A DNA stretch of 63,329 nucleotides, counting the filler, from Octopus bimaculoides (lineage: Eukaryota): assembly GCF_001194135.2 (NCBI RefSeq). It is 5 parts of 5 records of this genome, joined end to end, with 100 filler letters (N's around TTAATTAATTAA, not from the genome) between each part and the next. Parts side by side here need not be neighbours in the genome. Positions count along the whole stretch, not along the records: positions 18,049 to 36,496 come from NC_068994.1; 4 more parts are not named here. One strand, 5' to 3'. The position numbers and the translations under genes were made by a program. The notes under the pieces are model-generated. The model saw only the letters and a list, made by a program, of their open reading frames with translations. It had not been told where the DNA came from and searched no databases. Within the stretch, counting starts at the first letter, position 1; every line of letters starts with the position of its first letter. Shown here piece after piece: positions 17,949 to 35,709 of this stretch.

Positions 17949-18700
17949 NNNNNNNNNNNNNNNNNNNNNNNNNNNNNNNNNNNNNNNNNNNNTTAATTAA
18001 TTAANNNNNNNNNNNNNNNNNNNNNNNNNNNNNNNNNNNNNNNNNNNNGAGCATGTCCCTTGGTGGCTGACGATATGTGCATCTCTGATCATGAACAGAA
18101 GTAGTGGGGGAGTATCATAGCCATGTGTTGAGAAGAATTCTTTGGGGTTTGAATAATTCACCTTTGGAAACATGGGTGTTTTGCTCAACATCCTTAAACA
18201 AACCTTATTCAGGGACCTTTTGAGCGGGATGAGCTAATCGACCTGAAGAAAATTGTAACTGGGCCCCCACCTGCGAGGTCATGTGCTGTTTATCTTGATA
18301 TGAGATCACCATGTTGCGCACATATGGTTGTGACGCATGTGCCTGGTGTACCCTTATCAGGCGGGTAGTCATGATGGGTATAATGGGCTTCTTATATTTT
18401 ACCCCTGTGTCACTTTGATGGCATGCACTGCTCTTTCACTCAATAATAATAATAATAATAATAATTCTTTCTACTGGAAGTACAAGGCCTCAAATTTTGG
18501 GGAGGAGATTAAGTCGATTACATTGTCCCCAGTGCATAACTAGTACTTATTTAATCGACTCTGAAAAGATGAATGGCAAAGTTGACCTCGGCAGAATTTG
18601 AACTCAGAATGAGAAGATGGACAGAATGCTGTTAAGCATTTTGCCCGGTGTGCTAACTATACTGCCAGTTCACTACTTTTAATAATAATAATAATAATAA

Positions 18701-19620
18701 TTTCTTTATTAAACACAAAGGGTTTACATTAAAAAACATTGTGTACAGAACAGGACAAACAGAAAGTGAGGTTGCATGAAAGTCATGTAAACAATGAAAA
18801 ACAATCAATTATAGCAAAATTTCCCAAAAGGGAACTTCTAGGACTGTTCATGAAAACCTCACAAATCTATGGCAGTCCTGACCACCAGGGTAAGCACCCT
18901 TTCCACTTTGTCTACAAGCACATGCTTAGAGTAGGCCCATTCACTCGGGCCATTCTTGTGATATTGACCCACCTTTTAACAAAATTGCTGGGGTTGGGGT
19001 GGGAGAAGAACGTCCCTCTCCAACCACACTTTCTTTTTCAAGTGAAACTTGAAAAAGTTGATGAGGGCTTGGTCAAAGAGGAAAGTATCTGTCTTCAGCC
19101 CTTTCAATCTGGTCCACCACAGGCTATCAGCCAAAGAAAAACAGTCTGCCTTTCCTGGACAAAGGAAGGCAGTGGGACTATCTTCATAATAGACTCAACC
19201 AATAGCCGGATCCATTCCACATGTGACAGCAAGTGTTTGAGATAAACACACAAGCCAGAAATACTCGGGCACTGGTCAAGAGTATGCAGAATGGCTTTGT
19301 TGCTCTGTGCACATCTCAAGTAAACCCGGGTGACTGCACTTATGTGCCTGTAGAAAGTATCCTGAACAAGCAGTGCCCCACAGTAGCACGGCCAGGCCAA
19401 GGATTTCTGGAAATTATCCATAGGCCCTGGTCCGAAAGTTCTCCAGAACAAACCAGCCAACTCATTCTCATCGACTCCCAGAGTCTCCCTGAGAGTGTCA
19501 TCACACTTACTTGTCACTAACCCTTGATAGAAAGCCAACCACATTTCCTGATTGGCAGTGGTGTGTGAGTACCTAACGACACTCTAAGTGCCAGGCACCC
19601 TGCCTTGATCTATGTTTGAT
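18701..19620 (-). mobile_element. 5'-truncated L1/Tx1-clade LINE, ORF2 C-terminus and 3' end
   Basis: RETLGVDE...DNFQKSLAW...RCAQSNKAILHTLDQCP resembles a degenerate zf-RVT/CCHC region. The 3' end carries AATAAAG followed by (TTA)n. Confidence 0.72.
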
Positions 19621-19669
19621 CCAGGACTGCAGCTCAGTAACAGAGAGAAGCTGTAATAATGATGATAAT

Positions 19670-20123
19670 AATCCTTTCTACTAAAGGCACAAGGCCTGAA
19701 ATTTTGTGGGAGGGAACTAGTCGATTATATCAGCCCTAGTGTTTCACTGGTACTTATTTCGTCAACCCCAAAAGGATGATAGGCAAAGTCAACCTTGGCA
19801 GAATTTGAACTCAGAATATGAAGATGGATGGAATGCTGCTAAACATTTTGCCTGATGTGCTAACGATACTGCCAGTTCACCGATTTTAATAATAATAACA
19901 ATAAAGATAATCCTTTCTACTAAAGGTACAAGGCCTGAAATTTGGGGGAGGGGAGATTGTTGATTTTATTGACCCTAATACTCAACTAGTACATATTTTA
20001 TGAACCCTAAAAGGATAAAAGACAAAGTTGACCTCAGCAGAATTTGAACTCTGAATGTGAAAATGGATAAAATGCTGCTAAGCATTTTGCCTGGCGTGCT
20101 AACGATTCTGCCAGCTCACCACC

Positions 20124-20125
<2 letters not shown>
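19670..20125 (-). mobile_element. Two tandem decayed SINE family B copies
   Basis: Each has the core domain and an (AAT)n-associated end. Further decayed copies lie at ~18465-18680, 21360-21540, 24150-24360, 34070-34270 and 41785-42010 (-), and ~20300-20435 and 27355-27580 (+). Confidence 0.75.
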
Positions 20126-20172
<47 letters not shown>

Positions 20173-22180
20173 TAATAATGATAATAATAATAATAATAAT
20201 AATAACTAGCTGGACCTGTGAAAAATTCACGGAAAACATAAAAAATGTAAGCATCTGTAAACAGTGTACTGGTGCCATGAGAAATGTTTGTATATTATGA
20301 CTGTCTGTCTTTACATTCTGAGTTCAACTTCTGCCAAGATCGACTTTGCTTTTCATCCTTTCGGGGTCAATAAATTAAGTATTAGTTATGTATTGGGGTT
20401 GGTCTAACCAATTTGGCCCCCTCCCCACAAAAAATTCAGCCTAAAAAAGCATATTGTGACAGTTACAGAATATAGAAAGTAATGTAATACCAATGAAAGT
20501 AATGTAGCATCCAACCAAAATATCACAGTTACACAAACGTAAACGGAATTACTATTTAACCTTAAAATACATCATACATATTCAAAGAACCTTAATGTAC
20601 AAATTGAAATGCAAAAGAATGAAATAATAATGGATTTATGAATGAAAGTTTGGTAAATACGTTTATTTCCATTACGCGACACTTATTATTGCAAACATGT
20701 TTTAATTAACCTAAACTATACACACACAAACACAAATACATTCATATTTATATATATGTTTCGAGTTGTAGCTGTAATTCAAAGGGGCAAGCCTTGTTAT
20801 ATTCTGTGTGAGGCTTAATCTCCCTGAGAACTACATTAATGTTATGCATGTCTGTAGAGTACTCAGCCATTTGCGAGTTAATTTTATCCTCGCATGGTAA
20901 TGAAAAGTGAAATTGACATCCAATATTTGCTGTGTTTATGTATCCATGTATGAACTTTTCTTTGGATTTATGTATCTACTGTCTCTCTCACTTTCTCTTT
21001 TTCTCTTTCACTTCCTTTGTGTCCCTCTTCTCTCCTGCTTTTGATTTAACAATGTGTATATGTATCTATGTATTTACTTCTCTTGCAATGTGATAAACAT
21101 TCAAAAACACAAAACGAACACTGTCACCACTTACATTCTCTTTCACTCTCTCTCTTTCTTTCTCACTTTTTCTCTCTCTTTCTCTCATACATCCTCTCTG
21201 AAATATTCAAAAACACAGAACGAACACTGTCACCACTTAGTTTCTCTCTCTCTCTTGCTTTGCCACTTCTTTGAAGTAAGTGTGACACACACAACAAGTA
21301 TGTACAAAAATAAGAAGTTAGTATATTAATATTATTGATAGTAATAATAATAATAATAATAATCCTTTCTACTGAAGACACAAGGTCTGAAATTTGTGGG
21401 GAGGGGACTAGTCGATTACATTGTCCCCAGTGTTTAGCTGGTATTTCATTTATTGACTCCAACAGGATGAAAGGCAAAGTCAACCTTGATGGAATTTGAA
21501 CTCACAAAGTAGTGATGGATGAAATACCACTAAGCATTTCGTATACATATAGATGTAAGTATGTACATATACGTATGTATATATGCATATAAGTAAGTTT
21601 TATCTTATTAATTCTGATGCTCGCTCTATACGATCTTTTTACTCTTTTGTTTTTCTCTCTTATTCTTTTACCTCCTCTTCTCCCATTATTACTCTGTTAC
21701 TCTCTCTCCCTCCCTCACTCCTCCTCCCTTGCTTATGTGACCATCAGCCATCTTTCTTTCTTCTCCTAACTTGTGTTTCTTTCTTTCTCTCCATTGTAGC
21801 TGGAACAAGGAAGACGTGTTCTTGTCTGTCTCCTGTCCAAGCTTGATTTATGCATTCGCCACCACAACCTTGTTTAGGCTTAGCAGCCCTTCCTGTTTGT
21901 TTTCACTGTCCTGTTTGTGTTACCAATTTTGACCCTCCGCAAAAATCCCAAATTTTATTTGATTTGCTTTGTGTTCTATCAAAAGCGTATATTGTTGTTA
22001 AATGCTCAAAATATGAGAGTAGAAAAACAGCCAACAACTGATGAAGGGTCGCTCTTTATGTTGCTTGTCTTATTTTCCATTTGTGTTTTTTGTTGTTCGA
22101 AAAAATAGTTCATATTCCATGTACTTGTACTTTGTATTTTTTTGTTGTACACATTTCATGATGTTCTAAGCCCACACATG

Positions 22181-22214
<34 letters not shown>

Positions 22215-26300: not shown

Positions 26301-29299
26301 TACCTCATTCTCCAGAATGTTGGCTCTCTTGATTCCTTCCATGGCTATGTTTTCCCTGCATCTGTCAACTTGTAATTTTTCAGCAGGACAATCAAGTATA
26401 TCATTCTCACTCCTCTCAGGTGTATGAGTATGTGTGCACATGATGGGGGTTCTGTAAAAGCCAAGTACACAACCTCTTTTTCTATACCAAATCATAAAAA
26501 AAGGTGAAGCAACTATTCAGAGGCTCCCTTACTGGCATATCTCTGAACCATAAAAATAGGAATGGTGCTTGTTTATAAAGTCAGAAGTTTGTTGTATCAT
26601 ATAGCTCTGCTCTTTCTACTCTTTAACTACTGTACTCTAAGAAGAGAGAAAGTTTGTACACCAACCAATCTACACATTACTTTTCAGCTTGAATAAGTGA
26701 GGGAAAATTTCAGAGCTGCTCAAAACTATACAGATTTCTGCTTTAGTAAACATGTAGCCTAAAGGTCTACTTTTATATCTGAGAGCGTTGCTGCTAGAAT
26801 AAGAACAAGCCATGTGTCTTTGTCCCCCATCAGCAAGTTTGCTGTTTTCTCTATACAGGAATAGTTTAGCTCCAAATGACTGAGGTAGTATCTGTCACCA
26901 TGAAGGTTAAATAATATTGAAACACCAGGTGCTGGTAGACTAAGCAATATCTCTAGGAGCTTGGCCCAATGTGTTTTTACACAAAAATTATAAAGAAAAT
27001 ATTTCTCTGACAAAATCCTAATGCAAATGTCTTTAATGTTTTTGTATGCAAAGATGGGCTAAAAATATATGCACACATTTTCATATATATATATTTTATC
27101 TTTTACTTGTTTCAGTCATTGGACTGTGATCATGCTAAAGTATAACCTCAAAAGGTTTTAATTGACTTCAGTATTTATCCTATTAATCTATTTTGCTGAA
27201 GCACTAGGTTACATGGACATAAACAAACCAACACATGTTGTCAAGCAGTAGGTGATAGACAAGCACAAAGACACAAATCCATATATGATGAGCTTCCACA
27301 CAGTTTATGTCTACCAAATTCACTCACAAGGAATCAGTTAGCAATAAGAGAAAATACTAAATGTGGTGAGGTGGCAGAATCATTAGCATGCTCGGCAAAA
27401 TGCTTAGCAGCATTTTTGTCTGTCCTTACATCTGAGTTCAAATTCTGCTGAAGTTGACTTTTTTGCTTTTTATCCTTTTGGGGTCGATAAAATATGTACC
27501 AGTTGAGCATTGGGGTCAACGTAATCAACTTAACCCCTATCTCAAAATTGCTAGCCTTGTGCCAAAATTTGAAATCAATAACCTAACCAGTGACACTTAA
27601 CCTGAAACTACATTGTTGCAAGGCAAGCTTCTTAACAACACAGTCATACCTGCACTCACACACATCTCTCTCTCTCTCTATATATATATAATATAGATAT
27701 CACTGTAGGATGCAATTTGATACATTTCAAGAGAAACACTGAGGTAGTGTCCGACTGAATTACCTCCCCTTACATCAACTTTTTATTTTGTAGTTCATAT
27801 CTTGGCAAGACTAGAATTTATACCAGACGAAGGACTGGTGTTAACAATTGATTAAAAATCCTTACAGGTAATGGCTCAGCATGACTGCGTTACAACGATT
27901 GAATGTACTAAAAAGGAGTCTGGTTGATGTTCACTTTAATTGTCACCAAGTTAATATTTACAGCAAAGGTGTTGACCTTTTGTGGGAGGAGGTTTATAGC
28001 TTATATATAAGAAGGTGAGATGACAAAGGAAAAATGATTATCTTATGAACTTCATTGGCTTACAACTGCTTCTGCAATAAAATTCAGTGGACTCATAGTT
28101 GAGTGCCTGAGTAACACCTTATTCCTTCATCAGAAACTCAAATATGAAGTTTAAAATTGTTTATTCCTTTGTCATCTCACATTCTTATTACTGCACTATA
28201 CTCAACTAATGCTTCATTCTGAAGCATATGTAGACTGAATTCTACACCCGGTTATTAGTCTTGCAATGCTTATATATATACACACACACACACAAACTCA
28301 CCAAGTGTATAGCTTAATCTAAACTTCTACATTCTATACAGTTGCTTGAGGTGTTGAATATTGTAGTCACATCTTTGTCAATAACTTACAAACTATCTTT
28401 ATAGATTGAATTATTTAAAGAATTTCTATGTAGTTGCTTGGATTGTTCAACATAGCTGTTACAGTTGTGGCAGTAACTTTTAAATTTAATATTTTGAGCT
28501 AAATCACTTCTGTATTTGTTGCTTGAGGCACTCAATATTGCAACCACAATTCTGCTTGTAACTAACTAGCTGCTTTGTGAGATACACCACATGCTTCAAA
28601 TTGCAAATTTTAGGATGGAGAGCCCCACCATCCTCCATCACCATAAAGATAGTCTCAGTGATTAAACATATTGTTCAGCTACATCTGCAAACATAAATCT
28701 CTTGTGAACTGTTCCATGTTCTTATCTGATCTGTTGGGCAAGTAGAAACAAGAAAAGTTTCATACCTTACTCAGGGTGCTTCAAATTACACCATTGGTAA
28801 TATATCAGTGATGTGCATTCACTGATAATATAGAGTGATGTTGTGCTCATAACTCTTCTGCCAGCAAGTTGGTATCTTGACCACTAGGTCAGGAAGTCAA
28901 CTTTGCTTTTCATACTTCTGGGATAAATAAATAAAATACCAATCTAAGGTAAAAGATAGATACCAGTGACTGAGATCACAACACACTTCTTGAACAAAAT
29001 GCCAGTTACTCATTTGCAGCTGAGTGGACTGGAGCAACATGAAATGAAGTGACTTGCTCAAAAACACAACACACTAACTGGTCTAGTAATTGAAACCACG
29101 ATGTTGTGTTCATGAGTGCAAAACCTTAATCACTAGGCTGCATACCTTCACTCCTCATAAACAGATGAAAAAGAAAAAAAACTTTCCCTGTGATTTCATA
29201 AAGAAGAATTAAAAAAAAAAGAAAGTATGAAATCTTTTTGCTAGAGAAATTGTCATTCTTTTTTTAAAAAATTTTGATTTTATTATTGAATTAAATTAA

Positions 29300-31129
29300 T
29301 TATTTGTTTGTGAATATTCGTGTTGTGTTTGCTAACTGAGGATTGTTTGTAAATAAATGTGTTGCTGGAGCCATTTGTAAAGTGGGGAAAAGTTGAGCAG
29401 TTGAAGACATTTGGATTGTATGAAAAATCTGTGTGATGGGTGTGTTAGGAAGTGTGACTGTGTGTGCACCGAGTGTTGCCTGCTGTGGGATCACAGCAGT
29501 AGCAGTGCCTGCATTGGTGTGAAATACTGCTTGGCCTTCTGTTAGCTGTGCTTGTGAATCAATGGCTGTTAGTCCTGAAGCAGTGCTTGCATCTTGAATT
29601 ATGTTGGATTGTGTTGTCTGTTGTTGTTGATGATGTTGCACTTGTTGTTGTGTCAGTTGTATTTGCTGTAGATCGTTTTGAAAATGCACCTCAGTGACAG
29701 TAGCCCCTGTTGCTGGAGCATCTTCTGTTGTATTGTTCACAACTTCTGCCATAACATCAGCACGTGGCACACAGCTCAGCTTCCTTCGGCCCTTTGTAGG
29801 TGTTTTGTGTTTAAGAAGGTGGTCATAACGAGAAAAGGCAAACCCACACAGATTGCACTGGTAAGGTCGTTCACCGGAGTGGATTCGGGCATGAACTTTA
29901 AGGTAAGACTTCCGAGAGAATGCCTTATCGCATATTTCACAACTGTACTGTTTACTGGCACCTTCTTGGTGACACAGTTTGTGTCGTTCAAGATTGTCAC
30001 GCCGGGAAAAAGTTTTGCTGCAAACAGAGCAGTGAAATGGAACTGCATTGCAGTTGACACTTTTCTGAGGTGGCTTTGTGCTGCTGATTGGTAGGGCATA
30101 AGTGGTGATGATTCCAGGACAGTTGTCTTCTTGTTTCCAGCAAATGTTTGAACTGTCTATTGCACTGGTGTCAAGGTAGCAGCCACTACAAGATGTTGCA
30201 ACAACTGCAGGAAGTATTTTTACAATGTTCATTACATTGGTGCCATCTGTAGTAAAAGCTTGCACACTGTTGTCTACATCTGTTGACAACTCCACACCAG
30301 ACGGCACTACAGCTGCTGCTGCATGTGGTACAACAGCTGATGCAGTTGGTACAACAGTTGCAGCAGCAGCAACAGCTTCTTCATCATCAATGTCCTGTTT
30401 TAACACAAGATGGGGCTGATACTGTTGCAGCTCAGACTGTTGCTGCAATTGCTGTTGAAGAAGTAGTTGTTGTTGTTGTTGATGCTGTTGCAATTCTTGC
30501 TGAATCTGCAACAGATCAGATGTTGTTAATTTTTTTGTATCTTCATCTTCTTTTATTGCACAGATGTAGTTTACCTGATTTTCACCTGACAACACAGGAA
30601 ATGCATTAGAAATAATGCAACGTTCACTTGGTGGTTGTTGTAAGGAGCTTTGACAGGTTTTTTGTTGCTGTTTCTGTTGTTCACTAAGGACTTCTGAAAC
30701 CTGACTTGAAATATTGCTGCGGGTACTACTACTACTACTACTACTACTACTGTTGTTGTTGGCAGTGGTAGTGGTAGTAGTGGTGGTGGTGACATTGTTT
30801 ACATCATTGCTTGTAGAGACTGGCATGACACTGGCAACAGAAGAAATAATGTGGCTGAATATTTTGTCTGTATGCTGCTTACGACGATGCCGCATCAAGT
30901 GGTCATCACGTGCAAATGCACAGCTGCAAATCCCACAGACATATGGCTTCTCACCAGTGTGTGATCGACCATGCACCTTCAAATAAGACTTGCGTGAGAA
31001 TCCTTTTTGGCAGACATCGCAGTAGTAAACTGGTCTGGACAGGTGTGCAGCCTTGTGCCTCTCCAAGTTGTCACGACGGCTGAATGACTTTCCACAGATA
31101 TCACAGCGAGGAATCTTCTTCATCTTCAT
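29300..31129 (-). CDS. C2H2 zinc-finger protein, ~609 aa, two 3-finger arrays separated by a T/S/Q/A-rich linker
   Basis: Uninterrupted 1.8-kb ORF with six C-x2-C-x3-F-x5-L-x2-H motifs and TGEKPY/SGERPY linkers. The ORF track starts at TTG 31138; the first ATG is 31129 and a second ATG with better context (A at -3) is 31123. In-frame upstream stop at 31151-31153. Confidence 0.92.
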   Translation of the reverse strand: MKMKKIPRCDICGKSFSRRDNLERHKAAHLSRPVYYCDVCQKGFSRKSYLKVHGRSHTGEKPYVCGICSCAFARDDHLMRHRRKQHTDKIFSHIISSVASVMPVSTSNDVNNVTTTTTTTTTANNNSSSSSSSSSTRSNISSQVSEVLSEQQKQQQKTCQSSLQQPPSERCIISNAFPVLSGENQVNYICAIKEDEDTKKLTTSDLLQIQQELQQHQQQQQLLLQQQLQQQSELQQYQPHLVLKQDIDDEEAVAAAATVVPTASAVVPHAAAAVVPSGVELSTDVDNSVQAFTTDGTNVMNIVKILPAVVATSCSGCYLDTSAIDSSNICWKQEDNCPGIITTYALPISSTKPPQKSVNCNAVPFHCSVCSKTFSRRDNLERHKLCHQEGASKQYSCEICDKAFSRKSYLKVHARIHSGERPYQCNLCGFAFSRYDHLLKHKTPTKGRRKLSCVPRADVMAEVVNNTTEDAPATGATVTEVHFQNDLQQIQLTQQQVQHHQQQQTTQSNIIQDASTASGLTAIDSQAQLTEGQAVFHTNAGTATAVIPQQATLGAHTVTLPNTPITQIFHTIQMSSTAQLFPTLQMAPATHLFTNNPQLANTTRIFTNK

Positions 31130-31154
31130 CGAGAACAACAGGGTTGGGCTTCAT
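31101..31154 (-). other. Out-of-frame upstream ORF (MKPNPVVLDEDEEDSSL*) overlapping the ZF start
   Basis: ATG at 31154-31152 and TGA at 31103-31101, read directly. Function is not shown. Confidence 0.5.
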
Positions 31155-31252: not shown

Positions 31253-31404
31253 TTTACAAATGATTCCCTAATTAGACAGAGAAATCTCTCAGTGGGTGGG
31301 AGGAATCATATTGTAAAAATGTTTTGTACATGACTTTTGCTTTAAAAAGTTAGTAAAACAGATAAGTATTGTTTAATGGTGATGGGCAGGCAGTTTTAAA
31401 CAAC

Positions 31405-35072: not shown

Positions 35073-35709
35073 AATTTTTTTTCCTCTTGAAGGGATAGGG
35101 AAGGCCATTGCGACTCTATTGGATAGTTCTGCTCTGGATTACATTGATCTGAGCGTCTGAAGTGAAATGACGCTCAGCTGAATATGAATAACATTTCATA
35201 ACCAGCTAAATGATACCCTGAGGTAGCAAATATTAATTACTAGAAGTATCCTTAGTAGACTATGCAATCGACCAGTAAGATTTGAACTCAGGAATGTAGC
35301 GTTTTTATTCAATTTGAAGCTGTAAACCCCTTCTATCTATCTATCTATCTACCTATCTATCTGTCTATCTGTCTTTGTGTGTCTGTCTATCTATCTATCT
35401 ATCTATCTATCTACGGGTCTGTCTGTCTGTATGTATGTATGTATGTATGTAATATTTAGAGCTGTAAACAATTTTCTACAGTTTACTTTGCTATTGTCAA
35501 AATAGAAATAAGAGCAGTAAGGGCTGCAGATAAAAAGTATTACAATAAAACTCATCCCAAAGAAAAAAACAAAACAAAAAAACGAGTTATTTCCCTTGCA
35601 CCGTTATTATTTTATACATGTAATTGACAACAAATAAAATCAATCAATCTATCTATCTATCTATCTATCCACAAACACACAATCATGCACGCACACATGC
35701 AGACACTTG

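What the first reader, a model, noticed from the sequence alone, without database searches (positions are those of the whole stretch)
29771..31105. Bivalent zinc-finger protein: two 3-finger arrays with the same recognition helices, conserved despite heavy synonymous divergence
Seen: ZF1 and ZF4 both read FSRRDNLERHK, ZF2 and ZF5 both read FSRKSYLKVH, and ZF3/ZF6 read FARDDHLMRH/FSRYDHLLKH. The codons differ synonymously at 8 of 11 positions in ZF1 vs ZF4 and 6 of 10 in ZF2 vs ZF5, which argues for an old internal duplication under purifying selection rather than recent copying. The arrays are separated by ~280 aa of poly-T/S/Q/A sequence. Established: most expanded cephalopod C2H2 genes are long contiguous TGEKP arrays. 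Inference: one polypeptide could bind two copies of the same ~9-bp site far apart, acting as a looping or bridging factor or as a reader of repeated DNA.
Basis: partly seen in the sequence, partly recalled or inferred. Interest (0 to 1): 0.72.

Follow-up and report, generated by a model that had tools for sequence, protein, structure and literature searches.

The report
Two-handed octopus zinc-finger protein
An intronless Octopus bimaculoides gene encodes a zinc-finger protein with two far-apart three-finger DNA-reading "hands" that have kept the same base-contacting residues since before octopuses and cuttlefish split; it belongs to a small, so far cephalopod-only gene family and probably grips paired DNA sites, as the vertebrate ZEB and HIVEP proteins do.

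Summary
One uninterrupted minus-strand ORF (window 29300-31129, 609 aa) encodes fingers 1-3 and 4-6, 280 residues apart. Synonymous sites between the two arrays are saturated (pS 0.97).

The gene lies on O. bimaculoides chromosome CM046614.1. A cuttlefish-like ortholog keeps both arrays (76-77% identity, dN about 0.17), while the linker is only 31% identical.

The gene belongs to a small family of mostly intronless paralogs, found here only in cephalopods. Family marks are a last finger without its second His, an invariant "RKLSCVP", and C-terminal "IFPTIQM" repeats. Four paralog groups share the split layout [DN-SY-DH]...[DN-SY-DH], with nearly invariant contact residues but diverged frameworks. 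So the split is ancient, was not homogenised by gene conversion, and is under purifying selection.

Each hand is predicted to read about 5'-GGG-NNG-GAG-3'. The best reading is a two-handed transcription factor analogous, not homologous, to ZEB and HIVEP. Long-range bridging is untested. The hands are not fully identical: the third fingers and one linker length differ.

The parts
29300..31129 (-). Complete intronless coding sequence, 609 aa plus TAA stop (29300-29302). Identical to a predicted protein of O. bimaculoides GCA_001194135.2, chromosome CM046614.1, at about 29.2 Mb.
   Evidence: P0001; L001
30872..31111 (-). N-terminal hand, ZF1-ZF3 (aa 7-86). Helices are RRDNLER, RKSYLKV and RDDHLMR. 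ZF3 has H-x4-H spacing (RHRRKQH). The protein starts directly at ZF1 (MKMKKIPRC).
   Evidence: AF2 pLDDT 78-91
30032..30871 (-). 280-aa linker (aa 87-366), S/Q/T/V/A-rich with poly-T (30764-30790) and poly-S (30725-30751). Only 31% identical to the cuttlefish-type ortholog. Mostly predicted disordered.
30428..30523 (-). Q/L-rich segment (aa 203-234) predicted as one long helix with pLDDT 78-90. Not conserved in the ortholog P0002.
30119..30193 (-). Cys patch 'SCSGC' and 'NICWKQEDNC' (aa 313-337), the relic of a decayed finger. It aligns with the intact finger 'CDVCWKAFSQRSH..H' of paralog P0125 and with 'CEECWKEY' and 'CNVCWKTS' in other paralog groups.
29771..30037 (-). C-terminal hand, ZF4-ZF6 (aa 365-453). 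Helices are RRDNLER, RKSYLKV and RYDHLLK. The ZF4-ZF5 linker is 9 aa instead of 7. ZF6 has Cys425, Cys428 and His441 but no second His; Cys453 in 'KGRRKLSCVP' is invariant across the family.
   Evidence: AF2 pLDDT 79-92
29303..29449 (-). C-terminal tail (aa 561-609) with four copies of the family motif: ITQIFHTIQM, AQLFPTLQM, THLFTNN, TRIFTNK. It is 65% identical to the ortholog (dN 0.23). Probable effector or interaction motif.
29279..29284 (-). AATAAA polyadenylation-type signal 18 nt after the stop codon.
   Evidence: sequence only

Best explanation
This is a functional, intronless gene for a sequence-specific C2H2 transcription factor. It belongs to a small family found here only in coleoid cephalopods. 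The protein carries two equivalent three-finger DNA-binding hands joined by a long, mostly disordered tether.

Each hand is predicted to read a G-rich site of about 5'-GGG-NNG-GAG-3': the DH finger reads GGG, the SY finger reads NNG, and the DN finger reads GAG. With two hands of the same specificity, the protein should bind best where two such sites occur together, with loose spacing and orientation. That is avidity-based 'two-handed' binding, as in ZEB1/2 and HIVEP/ZAS. The conserved C-terminal IFPTIQM-type repeats would then recruit partners.

Shown: the gene, the two arrays, their age, the selection on their contact residues, and the family and its distribution.

Inferred: the DNA motif, the simultaneous use of both hands, and the role of the tail.
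For: - Intact ORF with an AATAAA signal.
- The ortholog in a decapod contig is also one ORF. Both arrays are 76-77% identical with dN 0.167 and 0.173 against saturated synonymous sites, while the linker has dN 0.81.
- Canonical contact residues (-1, 2, 3, 6) across nine split-array proteins of four paralog groups: RDNR in 17 of 18 DN fingers, RSYV in 15 of 18 SY fingers, RDH[R/K] in 18 of 18 DH fingers.
- Framework identity N versus C is 0.28 (DN) and 0.27 (DH) within one protein and 0.28 and 0.25 across groups, while N versus N across groups is 0.52 and 0.47. The split therefore predates the paralogs and was not homogenised by conversion.
- Engineered-finger tables pair RSDNLAR with GAG and RSDHLSR with GGG (PMC3607563).
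- AF2 gives both arrays pLDDT 80-92 and most of the linker below 50.
- Precedents for two separated clusters reading the same motif: ZEB (PMC8304685) and ZAS/HIVEP (PMC3048431, citing Fan and Maniatis 1990).
- An exhaustive profile search with the post-finger tail finds only 16 cluster representatives among 1.84 billion. Every one that carries a name is a cephalopod.
Against: - No binding data exist for any family member.
- The middle (SY) finger's specificity cannot be read from the code.
- ZF6 lacks a canonical fourth zinc ligand and may fold or bind differently from ZF3.
- The ZF4-ZF5 linker is two residues longer than ZF1-ZF2, so the two hands may prefer slightly different half-sites.
- The ZF1-ZF2 and ZF4-ZF5 linkers are not TGEKP-like.
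- Several paralogs work with a single contiguous array (groups E and G, P0122, P0124), so two hands are not essential to the family.
- No group-A ortholog from another octopod turned up in the protein search.
Confidence: 0.55

Rival explanations
1. Trans bridging or looping factor: the two equal hands hold two distant DNA segments together, or read dispersed repeated DNA, giving the protein an architectural rather than a local regulatory role.
For: The hands are equal and under selection. The 280-aa tether is mostly disordered. A predicted Q/L-rich helix in the linker (aa 203-234) could add self-association. The predicted motif occurs 4 times in the 18.4-kb piece against 0.48 expected, which is weak evidence.
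Against: Nothing here separates cis two-site binding from trans bridging. The helix is not conserved in the cuttlefish-type ortholog. In the known two-handed proteins the hands act on half-sites within one element. The motif excess rests on four G/A-rich hits and is not reproduced upstream of the ortholog.
Confidence: 0.15
2. Only one hand binds DNA. The other conserved array serves protein-protein or RNA contacts, as the C-terminal fingers of Ikaros and Hunchback serve dimerisation, or is a redundant spare.
For: ZF6 lacks the second His in every family member. The family's single-array paralogs show that one array suffices. Separated finger clusters often divide labour in other proteins (own knowledge).
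Against: The residues kept invariant in both arrays are exactly the canonical base-contacting ones (Arg-1, Asp2, Asn3 or His3, Arg6 or Lys6), while the frameworks drifted. The TGEKP-type linkers ZF2-ZF3 and ZF5-ZF6 are kept in both hands. Both arrays evolve at the same low dN.
Confidence: 0.2
3. Recent copying, gene conversion, or an annotation or assembly artefact produced the identical helices.
For: Repeated helices are fairly common in young poly-zinc-finger arrays: 23 of 104 control proteins repeat at least one.
Against: pS between the arrays is 0.97 and only 16 of 41 identical residues share a codon. The same layout occurs in an independent decapod contig and in Argonauta, O. vulgaris and Acanthosepion proteins. 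N-versus-C framework identity is the same within a protein as between paralogs.
Confidence: 0.02

Closest known systems
ZEB1/ZEB2 (deltaEF1/SIP1, Drosophila zfh-1), the 'two-handed' zinc-finger repressors
   Same: There is an N-terminal and a C-terminal finger cluster, separated by a long flexible region. Both clusters read the same kind of short motif (CACCT(G)). Both are needed for full binding, with variable spacing and orientation of the half-sites (PMC8304685).
   Different: There is no homeodomain and no other Pfam domain besides C2H2. The layout is 3+3 fingers instead of 4+3, and the predicted motif is unrelated and G-rich. The protein is much smaller and the gene is intronless. No similarity was found beyond generic fingers. 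The origin is independent, within cephalopods.
HIVEP/Schnurri/ZAS proteins (PRDII-BF1/MBP-1, KRC/ZAS3)
   Same: They have two widely separated finger modules that each recognise the same DNA sequence (GGGGNNNNCC-type), followed by acidic and Ser/Thr-rich sequence (PMC3048431 and Fan and Maniatis 1990 as cited there).
   Different: ZAS domains are pairs of fingers in proteins of more than 2000 aa and are conserved across bilaterians. Here there are triplets in a 609-aa protein restricted to cephalopods, with a different C-terminal motif.
Lineage-specific C2H2 expansions of coleoid cephalopods
   Same: It is a C2H2 gene with an intronless coding exon, present as several paralogs on one chromosome and shared by octopods and decapods. 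That matches the 'coleoid expansion' class described in PMC12513265.
   Different: It is not a long contiguous TGEKP array. The family is small (16 cluster representatives at 50% identity), has split arrays with fixed helices, and carries its own C-terminal motif. The paper does not describe this architecture.
Sp/KLF three-finger factors
   Same: A three-finger unit with Arg-Asp-His-type helices predicted to read G-rich DNA, next to Q-rich regions.
   Different: KLF/SP are defined by C-X4-C in fingers 1 and 2 and by a single C-terminal triplet (PMC7661307). Here all fingers are C-X2-C, there are two triplets, and the helix series DN-SY-DH differs.

Membership tests
C2H2 zinc-finger proteins (Pfam PF00096) | Repeated C-x2-4-C-x12-H-x3-5-H units that score above the Pfam gathering threshold | tested here: met
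   PF00096 scores 97.5 bits against a cut-off of 25.2, with 6 stretches. Five fingers match the regular expression. The sixth lacks the last His.
Cephalopod 'RKLSCVP / IFPTIQM' paralog family (defined here) | The last finger is C-x2-C-x12-H without a second His, followed by x11-Cys in '(N/T)KGxRKLSCVP' | tested here: met
   Cys453, Lys450 and His441 are invariant in 21 family proteins.
Cephalopod 'RKLSCVP / IFPTIQM' paralog family (defined here) | C-terminal repeats of the Q-I-F-P-T-I-Q-M type | tested here: met
   The window protein has ITQIFHTIQM, AQLFPTLQM and two shorter copies. It scores 116 bits, E=1.4e-28, against the tail profile. It was one of the 12 sequences the profile was built from, so this match is partly by construction.
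ZEB / zfh-1 family | A central homeodomain between the two finger clusters | tested here: not met
   The Pfam scan at E<=0.1 finds no homeodomain.
ZEB / zfh-1 family | Two separated finger clusters with like specificity | tested here: inconclusive
   The architecture and equal contact residues are shown. Specificity was not measured.
HIVEP / Schnurri / ZAS | Two ZAS domains (finger pair, then acidic region, then Ser/Thr-rich region) in a very large protein | tested here: not met
   The protein has triplets, not pairs, and is 609 aa. No HIVEP-like hits appear among the best 120 homologs.
Sp/KLF | C-X4-C-X12-H-X3-H-X7-C-X4-C-X12-H-X3-H-X7-C-X2-C-X12-H-X3-H as a single C-terminal triplet (PMC7661307) | tested here: not met
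   All six fingers are C-X2-C and there are two triplets.
KRAB, SCAN, BTB or ZAD zinc-finger families | An N-terminal effector domain | tested here: not met
   The protein starts at ZF1, and Pfam finds no such domain. The 'KRAB' names on Acanthosepion relatives are source labels only.
Ikaros / Hunchback type (DNA-binding cluster plus dimerisation cluster) | A C-terminal pair of atypical fingers without canonical base-contact residues | tested here: not met
   The C-terminal array has three fingers that carry the same canonical contact residues as the N-terminal array.

The most novel reading that the evidence does not exclude
A transcription-factor family born in coleoid cephalopods has its own C-terminal effector motif, and its split members act as genuine DNA-bridging or architectural proteins. 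The two equal hands would clamp two copies of a GGG-NNG-GAG-type site on separate DNA segments. The odd last finger (C2H plus a distal Cys) would form a new zinc-binding variant. Such a factor could contribute to the unusual long-range regulatory organisation of coleoid genomes.
Probability: 0.1. Interest if true: 0.8.

Novelty: new variant of a known kind. Interest (0 to 1): 0.45.

Why it matters
Cephalopod C2H2 expansions have so far been described mainly by counts and expression. This locus picks out a small, old and well-defined sub-family with a testable design: two hands of the same predicted specificity, a disordered tether, and a private C-terminal motif. It would be an independent invention of the two-handed binding mode known from ZEB and HIVEP. 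Because the family contains both single-hand and two-hand paralogs, it offers a natural series for asking what a second identical hand adds: affinity, site-pair selectivity, or bridging. It also offers two small structural puzzles, namely a finger that has lacked its fourth canonical ligand since before the paralogs diverged, and the IFPTIQM repeats.

Tried and rejected
1. Protein search with the tail alignment A2 in the 5.8-billion-cluster index returned only 5 hits and missed even the input proteins. Poly-Q words probably swamped the word prefilter, so the search was uninformative.
The 42-aa version (A5) gave 12 candidates and no scores. Relatives outside cephalopods that keep only this signature therefore cannot be excluded.
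3. A PDB sequence search with the N-terminal hand gave only generic poly-finger hits (ZNF568, Aart, PRDM9, CTCF, WT1) and no specific relative.
4. Gene conversion or recent duplication was rejected.
5. Membership in KLF/SP, ZEB, HIVEP, KRAB/ZAD/BTB or the Ikaros type was rejected on defining features.
6. The count of the predicted motif GGGNNGGAG (4 against 0.48 expected in the piece; 1-2 per 21-kb related locus) is too few and too purine-biased to carry weight.
7. Pfam scans of seven other ORFs in the piece and an Rfam scan of the piece found nothing.
8. AF2 gives no coordinates here, so whether Cys453 sits at the zinc site of ZF6 could not be checked. Local pLDDT there is only about 60-65.

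Full report
**What is in the sequence.** It encodes 609 aa, with an in-frame stop just upstream at 31151-31153 and an AATAAA signal 18 nt after the stop. Pfam sees only C2H2 fingers (PF00096, six stretches, E=2e-28) and no other domain. ZF1-ZF3 occupy aa 9-86 and ZF4-ZF6 occupy aa 367-453. The gap between them is 280 aa, rich in S, Q, T, V and A.

The helices and counts reproduce exactly. FSRRDNLERHK and FSRKSYLKVH each occur twice, with 8 of 11 and 6 of 10 identical residues encoded by different codons. Over 71 aligned codons, 41 residues are identical but only 16 codons are. By Nei-Gojobori counting, pS between the arrays is 0.97 (saturated) and pN is 0.27. Recent copying and gene conversion are therefore excluded.

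**Origin and ortholog.** The protein is identical to a predicted protein on a 60.58-Mb record, O. bimaculoides GCA_001194135.2 chromosome CM046614.1, at about 29.2 Mb. The closest other protein (P0002, 540 aa) sits on an ENA contig and is nearly identical to a partial Acanthosepion pharaonis protein (P0018), so it comes from a cuttlefish-type decapod. It is also one uninterrupted ORF. Between the two orthologs the regions compare as follows:
- N-terminal array: 77% identical, dN 0.167
- C-terminal array: 76% identical, dN 0.173
- Last 49 residues: 65% identical, dN 0.23
- Linker: 31% identical, dN 0.81
- Synonymous sites: at or near saturation throughout

Both hands have therefore been kept, equally, since the octopod-decapod split. 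The commonly cited age of roughly 270 million years or more is from my own knowledge.

**A family, not a singleton.** Cephalopod proteins of 340-720 aa share three marks with the window protein:
- a start directly at ZF1 (MKKPxC), seen in the window protein's group and in groups B, C and E;
- a last finger with Cys, Cys and His but no second His, followed by an invariant Cys 11 residues later in '(N/T)KGxRKLSCVP';
- C-terminal repeats of the type TQIFPTIQM.

An exhaustive HMMER search of 1.84 billion cluster representatives, using a profile of the post-finger region only, found just 16 proteins. Every one that carries a source name is a cephalopod: Argonauta hians, Acanthosepion pharaonis or Octopus.

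In Argonauta, seven paralogs lie on one 30.66-Mb contig. Four of them sit within about 190 kb (15.56-15.75 Mb); the others are at 10.9, 12.6 and 23.6 Mb. Six of the seven are single ORFs. In O. bimaculoides, a group-B paralog lies 6.5 Mb from the window gene on the same chromosome.

**The split layout is ancestral to several paralogs.** Naming fingers by helix residues 2-3, the layouts are as follows:
- Window protein's group (A): [DN-SY-DH]--274--[DN-SY-DH*]
- Groups B and C: [DN-SY-DH-SY-DH]--146 to 215--[DN-SY-DH*]
- P0123 (group F): [DN-SY-DH]--104--[DN-SY-DH*]
- Group D: a degenerate 3+3
- Other paralogs: one contiguous array of 3-5 fingers ending in DH*

Across the nine split proteins of groups A, B, C and F, the canonical contact residues (-1, 2, 3, 6) are RDNR in 17 of 18 DN fingers, RSYV in 15 of 18 SY fingers, and RDH[R/K] in 18 of 18 DH fingers.

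At 17 framework positions the picture differs. N-versus-N identity across groups is 0.52 for DN fingers and 0.47 for DH fingers. N-versus-C identity is 0.28 and 0.27 within one protein, and the same (0.28 and 0.25) between different paralogs. So the N and C arrays separated before the paralog groups did and were never homogenised. What has been held constant is specifically the DNA-reading surface.

The linker is not featureless. A Cys patch and a 'CxxCW' element (aa 313-337) align with an intact finger in paralog P0125. This shows that at least one finger decayed in the gap.

**Predicted function.** Engineered-finger tables pair RSDNLAR with GAG and RSDHLSR with GGG (PMC3607563 Table 2). By the canonical code, RRDNLER should read GAG, while RDDHLMR and RYDHLLK should read GGG. 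The SY finger contributes a 3' G through Arg-1, with its other two bases uncertain. Each hand is thus predicted to read about 5'-GGG-NNG-GAG-3'. This is an inference, not a measurement.

AF2 with the 21-sequence family alignment models both arrays confidently (pLDDT 80-92). Most of the linker and the whole tail fall below 50. One long Q/L-rich helix is predicted at aa 203-234 (pLDDT 78-90), but it is not conserved in the cuttlefish-type ortholog.

Two equal hands on a flexible tether is the design of ZEB1/2. Their N- and C-terminal clusters bind two CACCT(G) half-sites with variable spacing and orientation (PMC8304685). [quoted passage not shown] My best reading is therefore avidity-driven binding to paired sites, with the conserved IFPTIQM repeats as the effector or interaction end.

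**Caveats.**
- The hands are similar, not identical. ZF3 is H-x4-H with Arg6. ZF6 lacks the second His and has Lys6.
- The H-x11-C spacing of 'RKLSC' equals the normal distance from a finger's first His to the next finger's first Cys. The Cys may therefore be a relic of a lost seventh finger rather than a ligand.
- The ZF4-ZF5 linker is 9 residues in both octopus and cuttlefish, against 7 for ZF1-ZF2. This could shift the register of the C-terminal hand.
- Single-array paralogs exist, so a second hand is an option within the family, not a requirement.
- The predicted motif occurs 4 times in the 18.4-kb piece against 0.48 expected, including once about 165 bp upstream of the ATG (31294-31302). 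The hits are purine-rich and are not reproduced upstream of the ortholog. I give this no weight.
- No group-A ortholog from another octopod appeared in the protein search. Two further indexed searches were unproductive, so a wider distribution of the ZF6 signature cannot be ruled out.

**Comparison and novelty.** The protein fails defining features of ZEB (no homeodomain), HIVEP/ZAS (finger pairs, giant proteins), KLF/SP (C-X4-C fingers, single triplet; PMC7661307), KRAB/ZAD/BTB/SCAN families (no N-terminal domain) and the Ikaros/Hunchback type. It works like a two-handed zinc-finger factor but is not a member of any described two-handed family. The recent survey of cephalopod C2H2 expansions distinguishes coleoid-wide from lineage-specific expansions but does not describe this architecture (PMC12513265). 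I rate it a new variant of a known kind.

**Verdict.** The bridging idea is open, and the concept has clear precedents. Interest is moderate (0.45).

Noticed in passing
window 29771-29857 (aa 425-453): In all 21 family proteins examined, the last finger has no second His. An invariant Cys sits exactly 11 residues after the first His, which is the spacing to the first Cys of a next finger in a normal array. It is either the relic of a lost seventh finger or an unusual C2H-C zinc site.
   Followed up: partly
window 29303-29449 (aa 561-609), and the C-termini of P0004, P0014, P0106, P0123, P0125 and others: A repeated motif of the type TQIFPTIQM(Y/S)P defines the family. It gives no Pfam hit and is predicted disordered. 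It may be a lineage-specific effector motif playing the role that KRAB or ZAD play elsewhere.
   Followed up: partly
window 30119-30193 (aa 313-337): The 'low-complexity' linker holds a Cys patch (SCSGC) and 'NICWKQEDNC'. These are conserved in the cuttlefish-type ortholog (CCWKQEDD) and align with an intact finger of paralog P0125, so they mark a decayed finger.
   Followed up: yes
window 30428-30523 (aa 203-234): A Q/L-rich stretch (LLQIQQELQQHQQQQQLLLQQQLQQQSELQQ) is predicted as one long helix with pLDDT 78-90 and could be a coiled coil. It is absent from the decapod ortholog.
   Followed up: partly
window 31294-31302, 18499-18507, 18997-19005, 21706-21714: The site predicted for each hand (GGGNNGGAG) occurs 4 times against 0.48 expected in the piece. 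One copy lies about 165 bp upstream of the gene's ATG. All hits are purine-rich, and the excess is not seen upstream of the ortholog.
   Followed up: partly
window 19667-20205: A 239-bp unit repeated twice (80% match) runs directly into a (TAA)27 microsatellite. Just upstream, at about 18.0-20.0 kb, the GC fraction rises to 0.41-0.43 and there are overlapping ORFs (18739-19544) with no Pfam match. This may be an old repeat element.
   Followed up: partly
window 35332-35450 and 22184-22214: There are TCTA/TCTG tetranucleotide microsatellites (about 21-24 copies) and an (AT)15 run.
   Followed up: no
Argonauta hians contig BAAFZT010000037.1 (L004-L010): Seven family paralogs lie on one 30.66-Mb contig. 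Four are within about 190 kb (15.56-15.75 Mb). Six are single uninterrupted ORFs. The group-B gene (P0006) is annotated with an intron that adds an N-terminal extension.
   Followed up: partly
P0128 and P0131 (Acanthosepion pharaonis): Two family members are named 'KRAB' by their source, although no KRAB domain is listed among their Pfam hits. This looks like an annotation label carried over from best hits.
   Followed up: no
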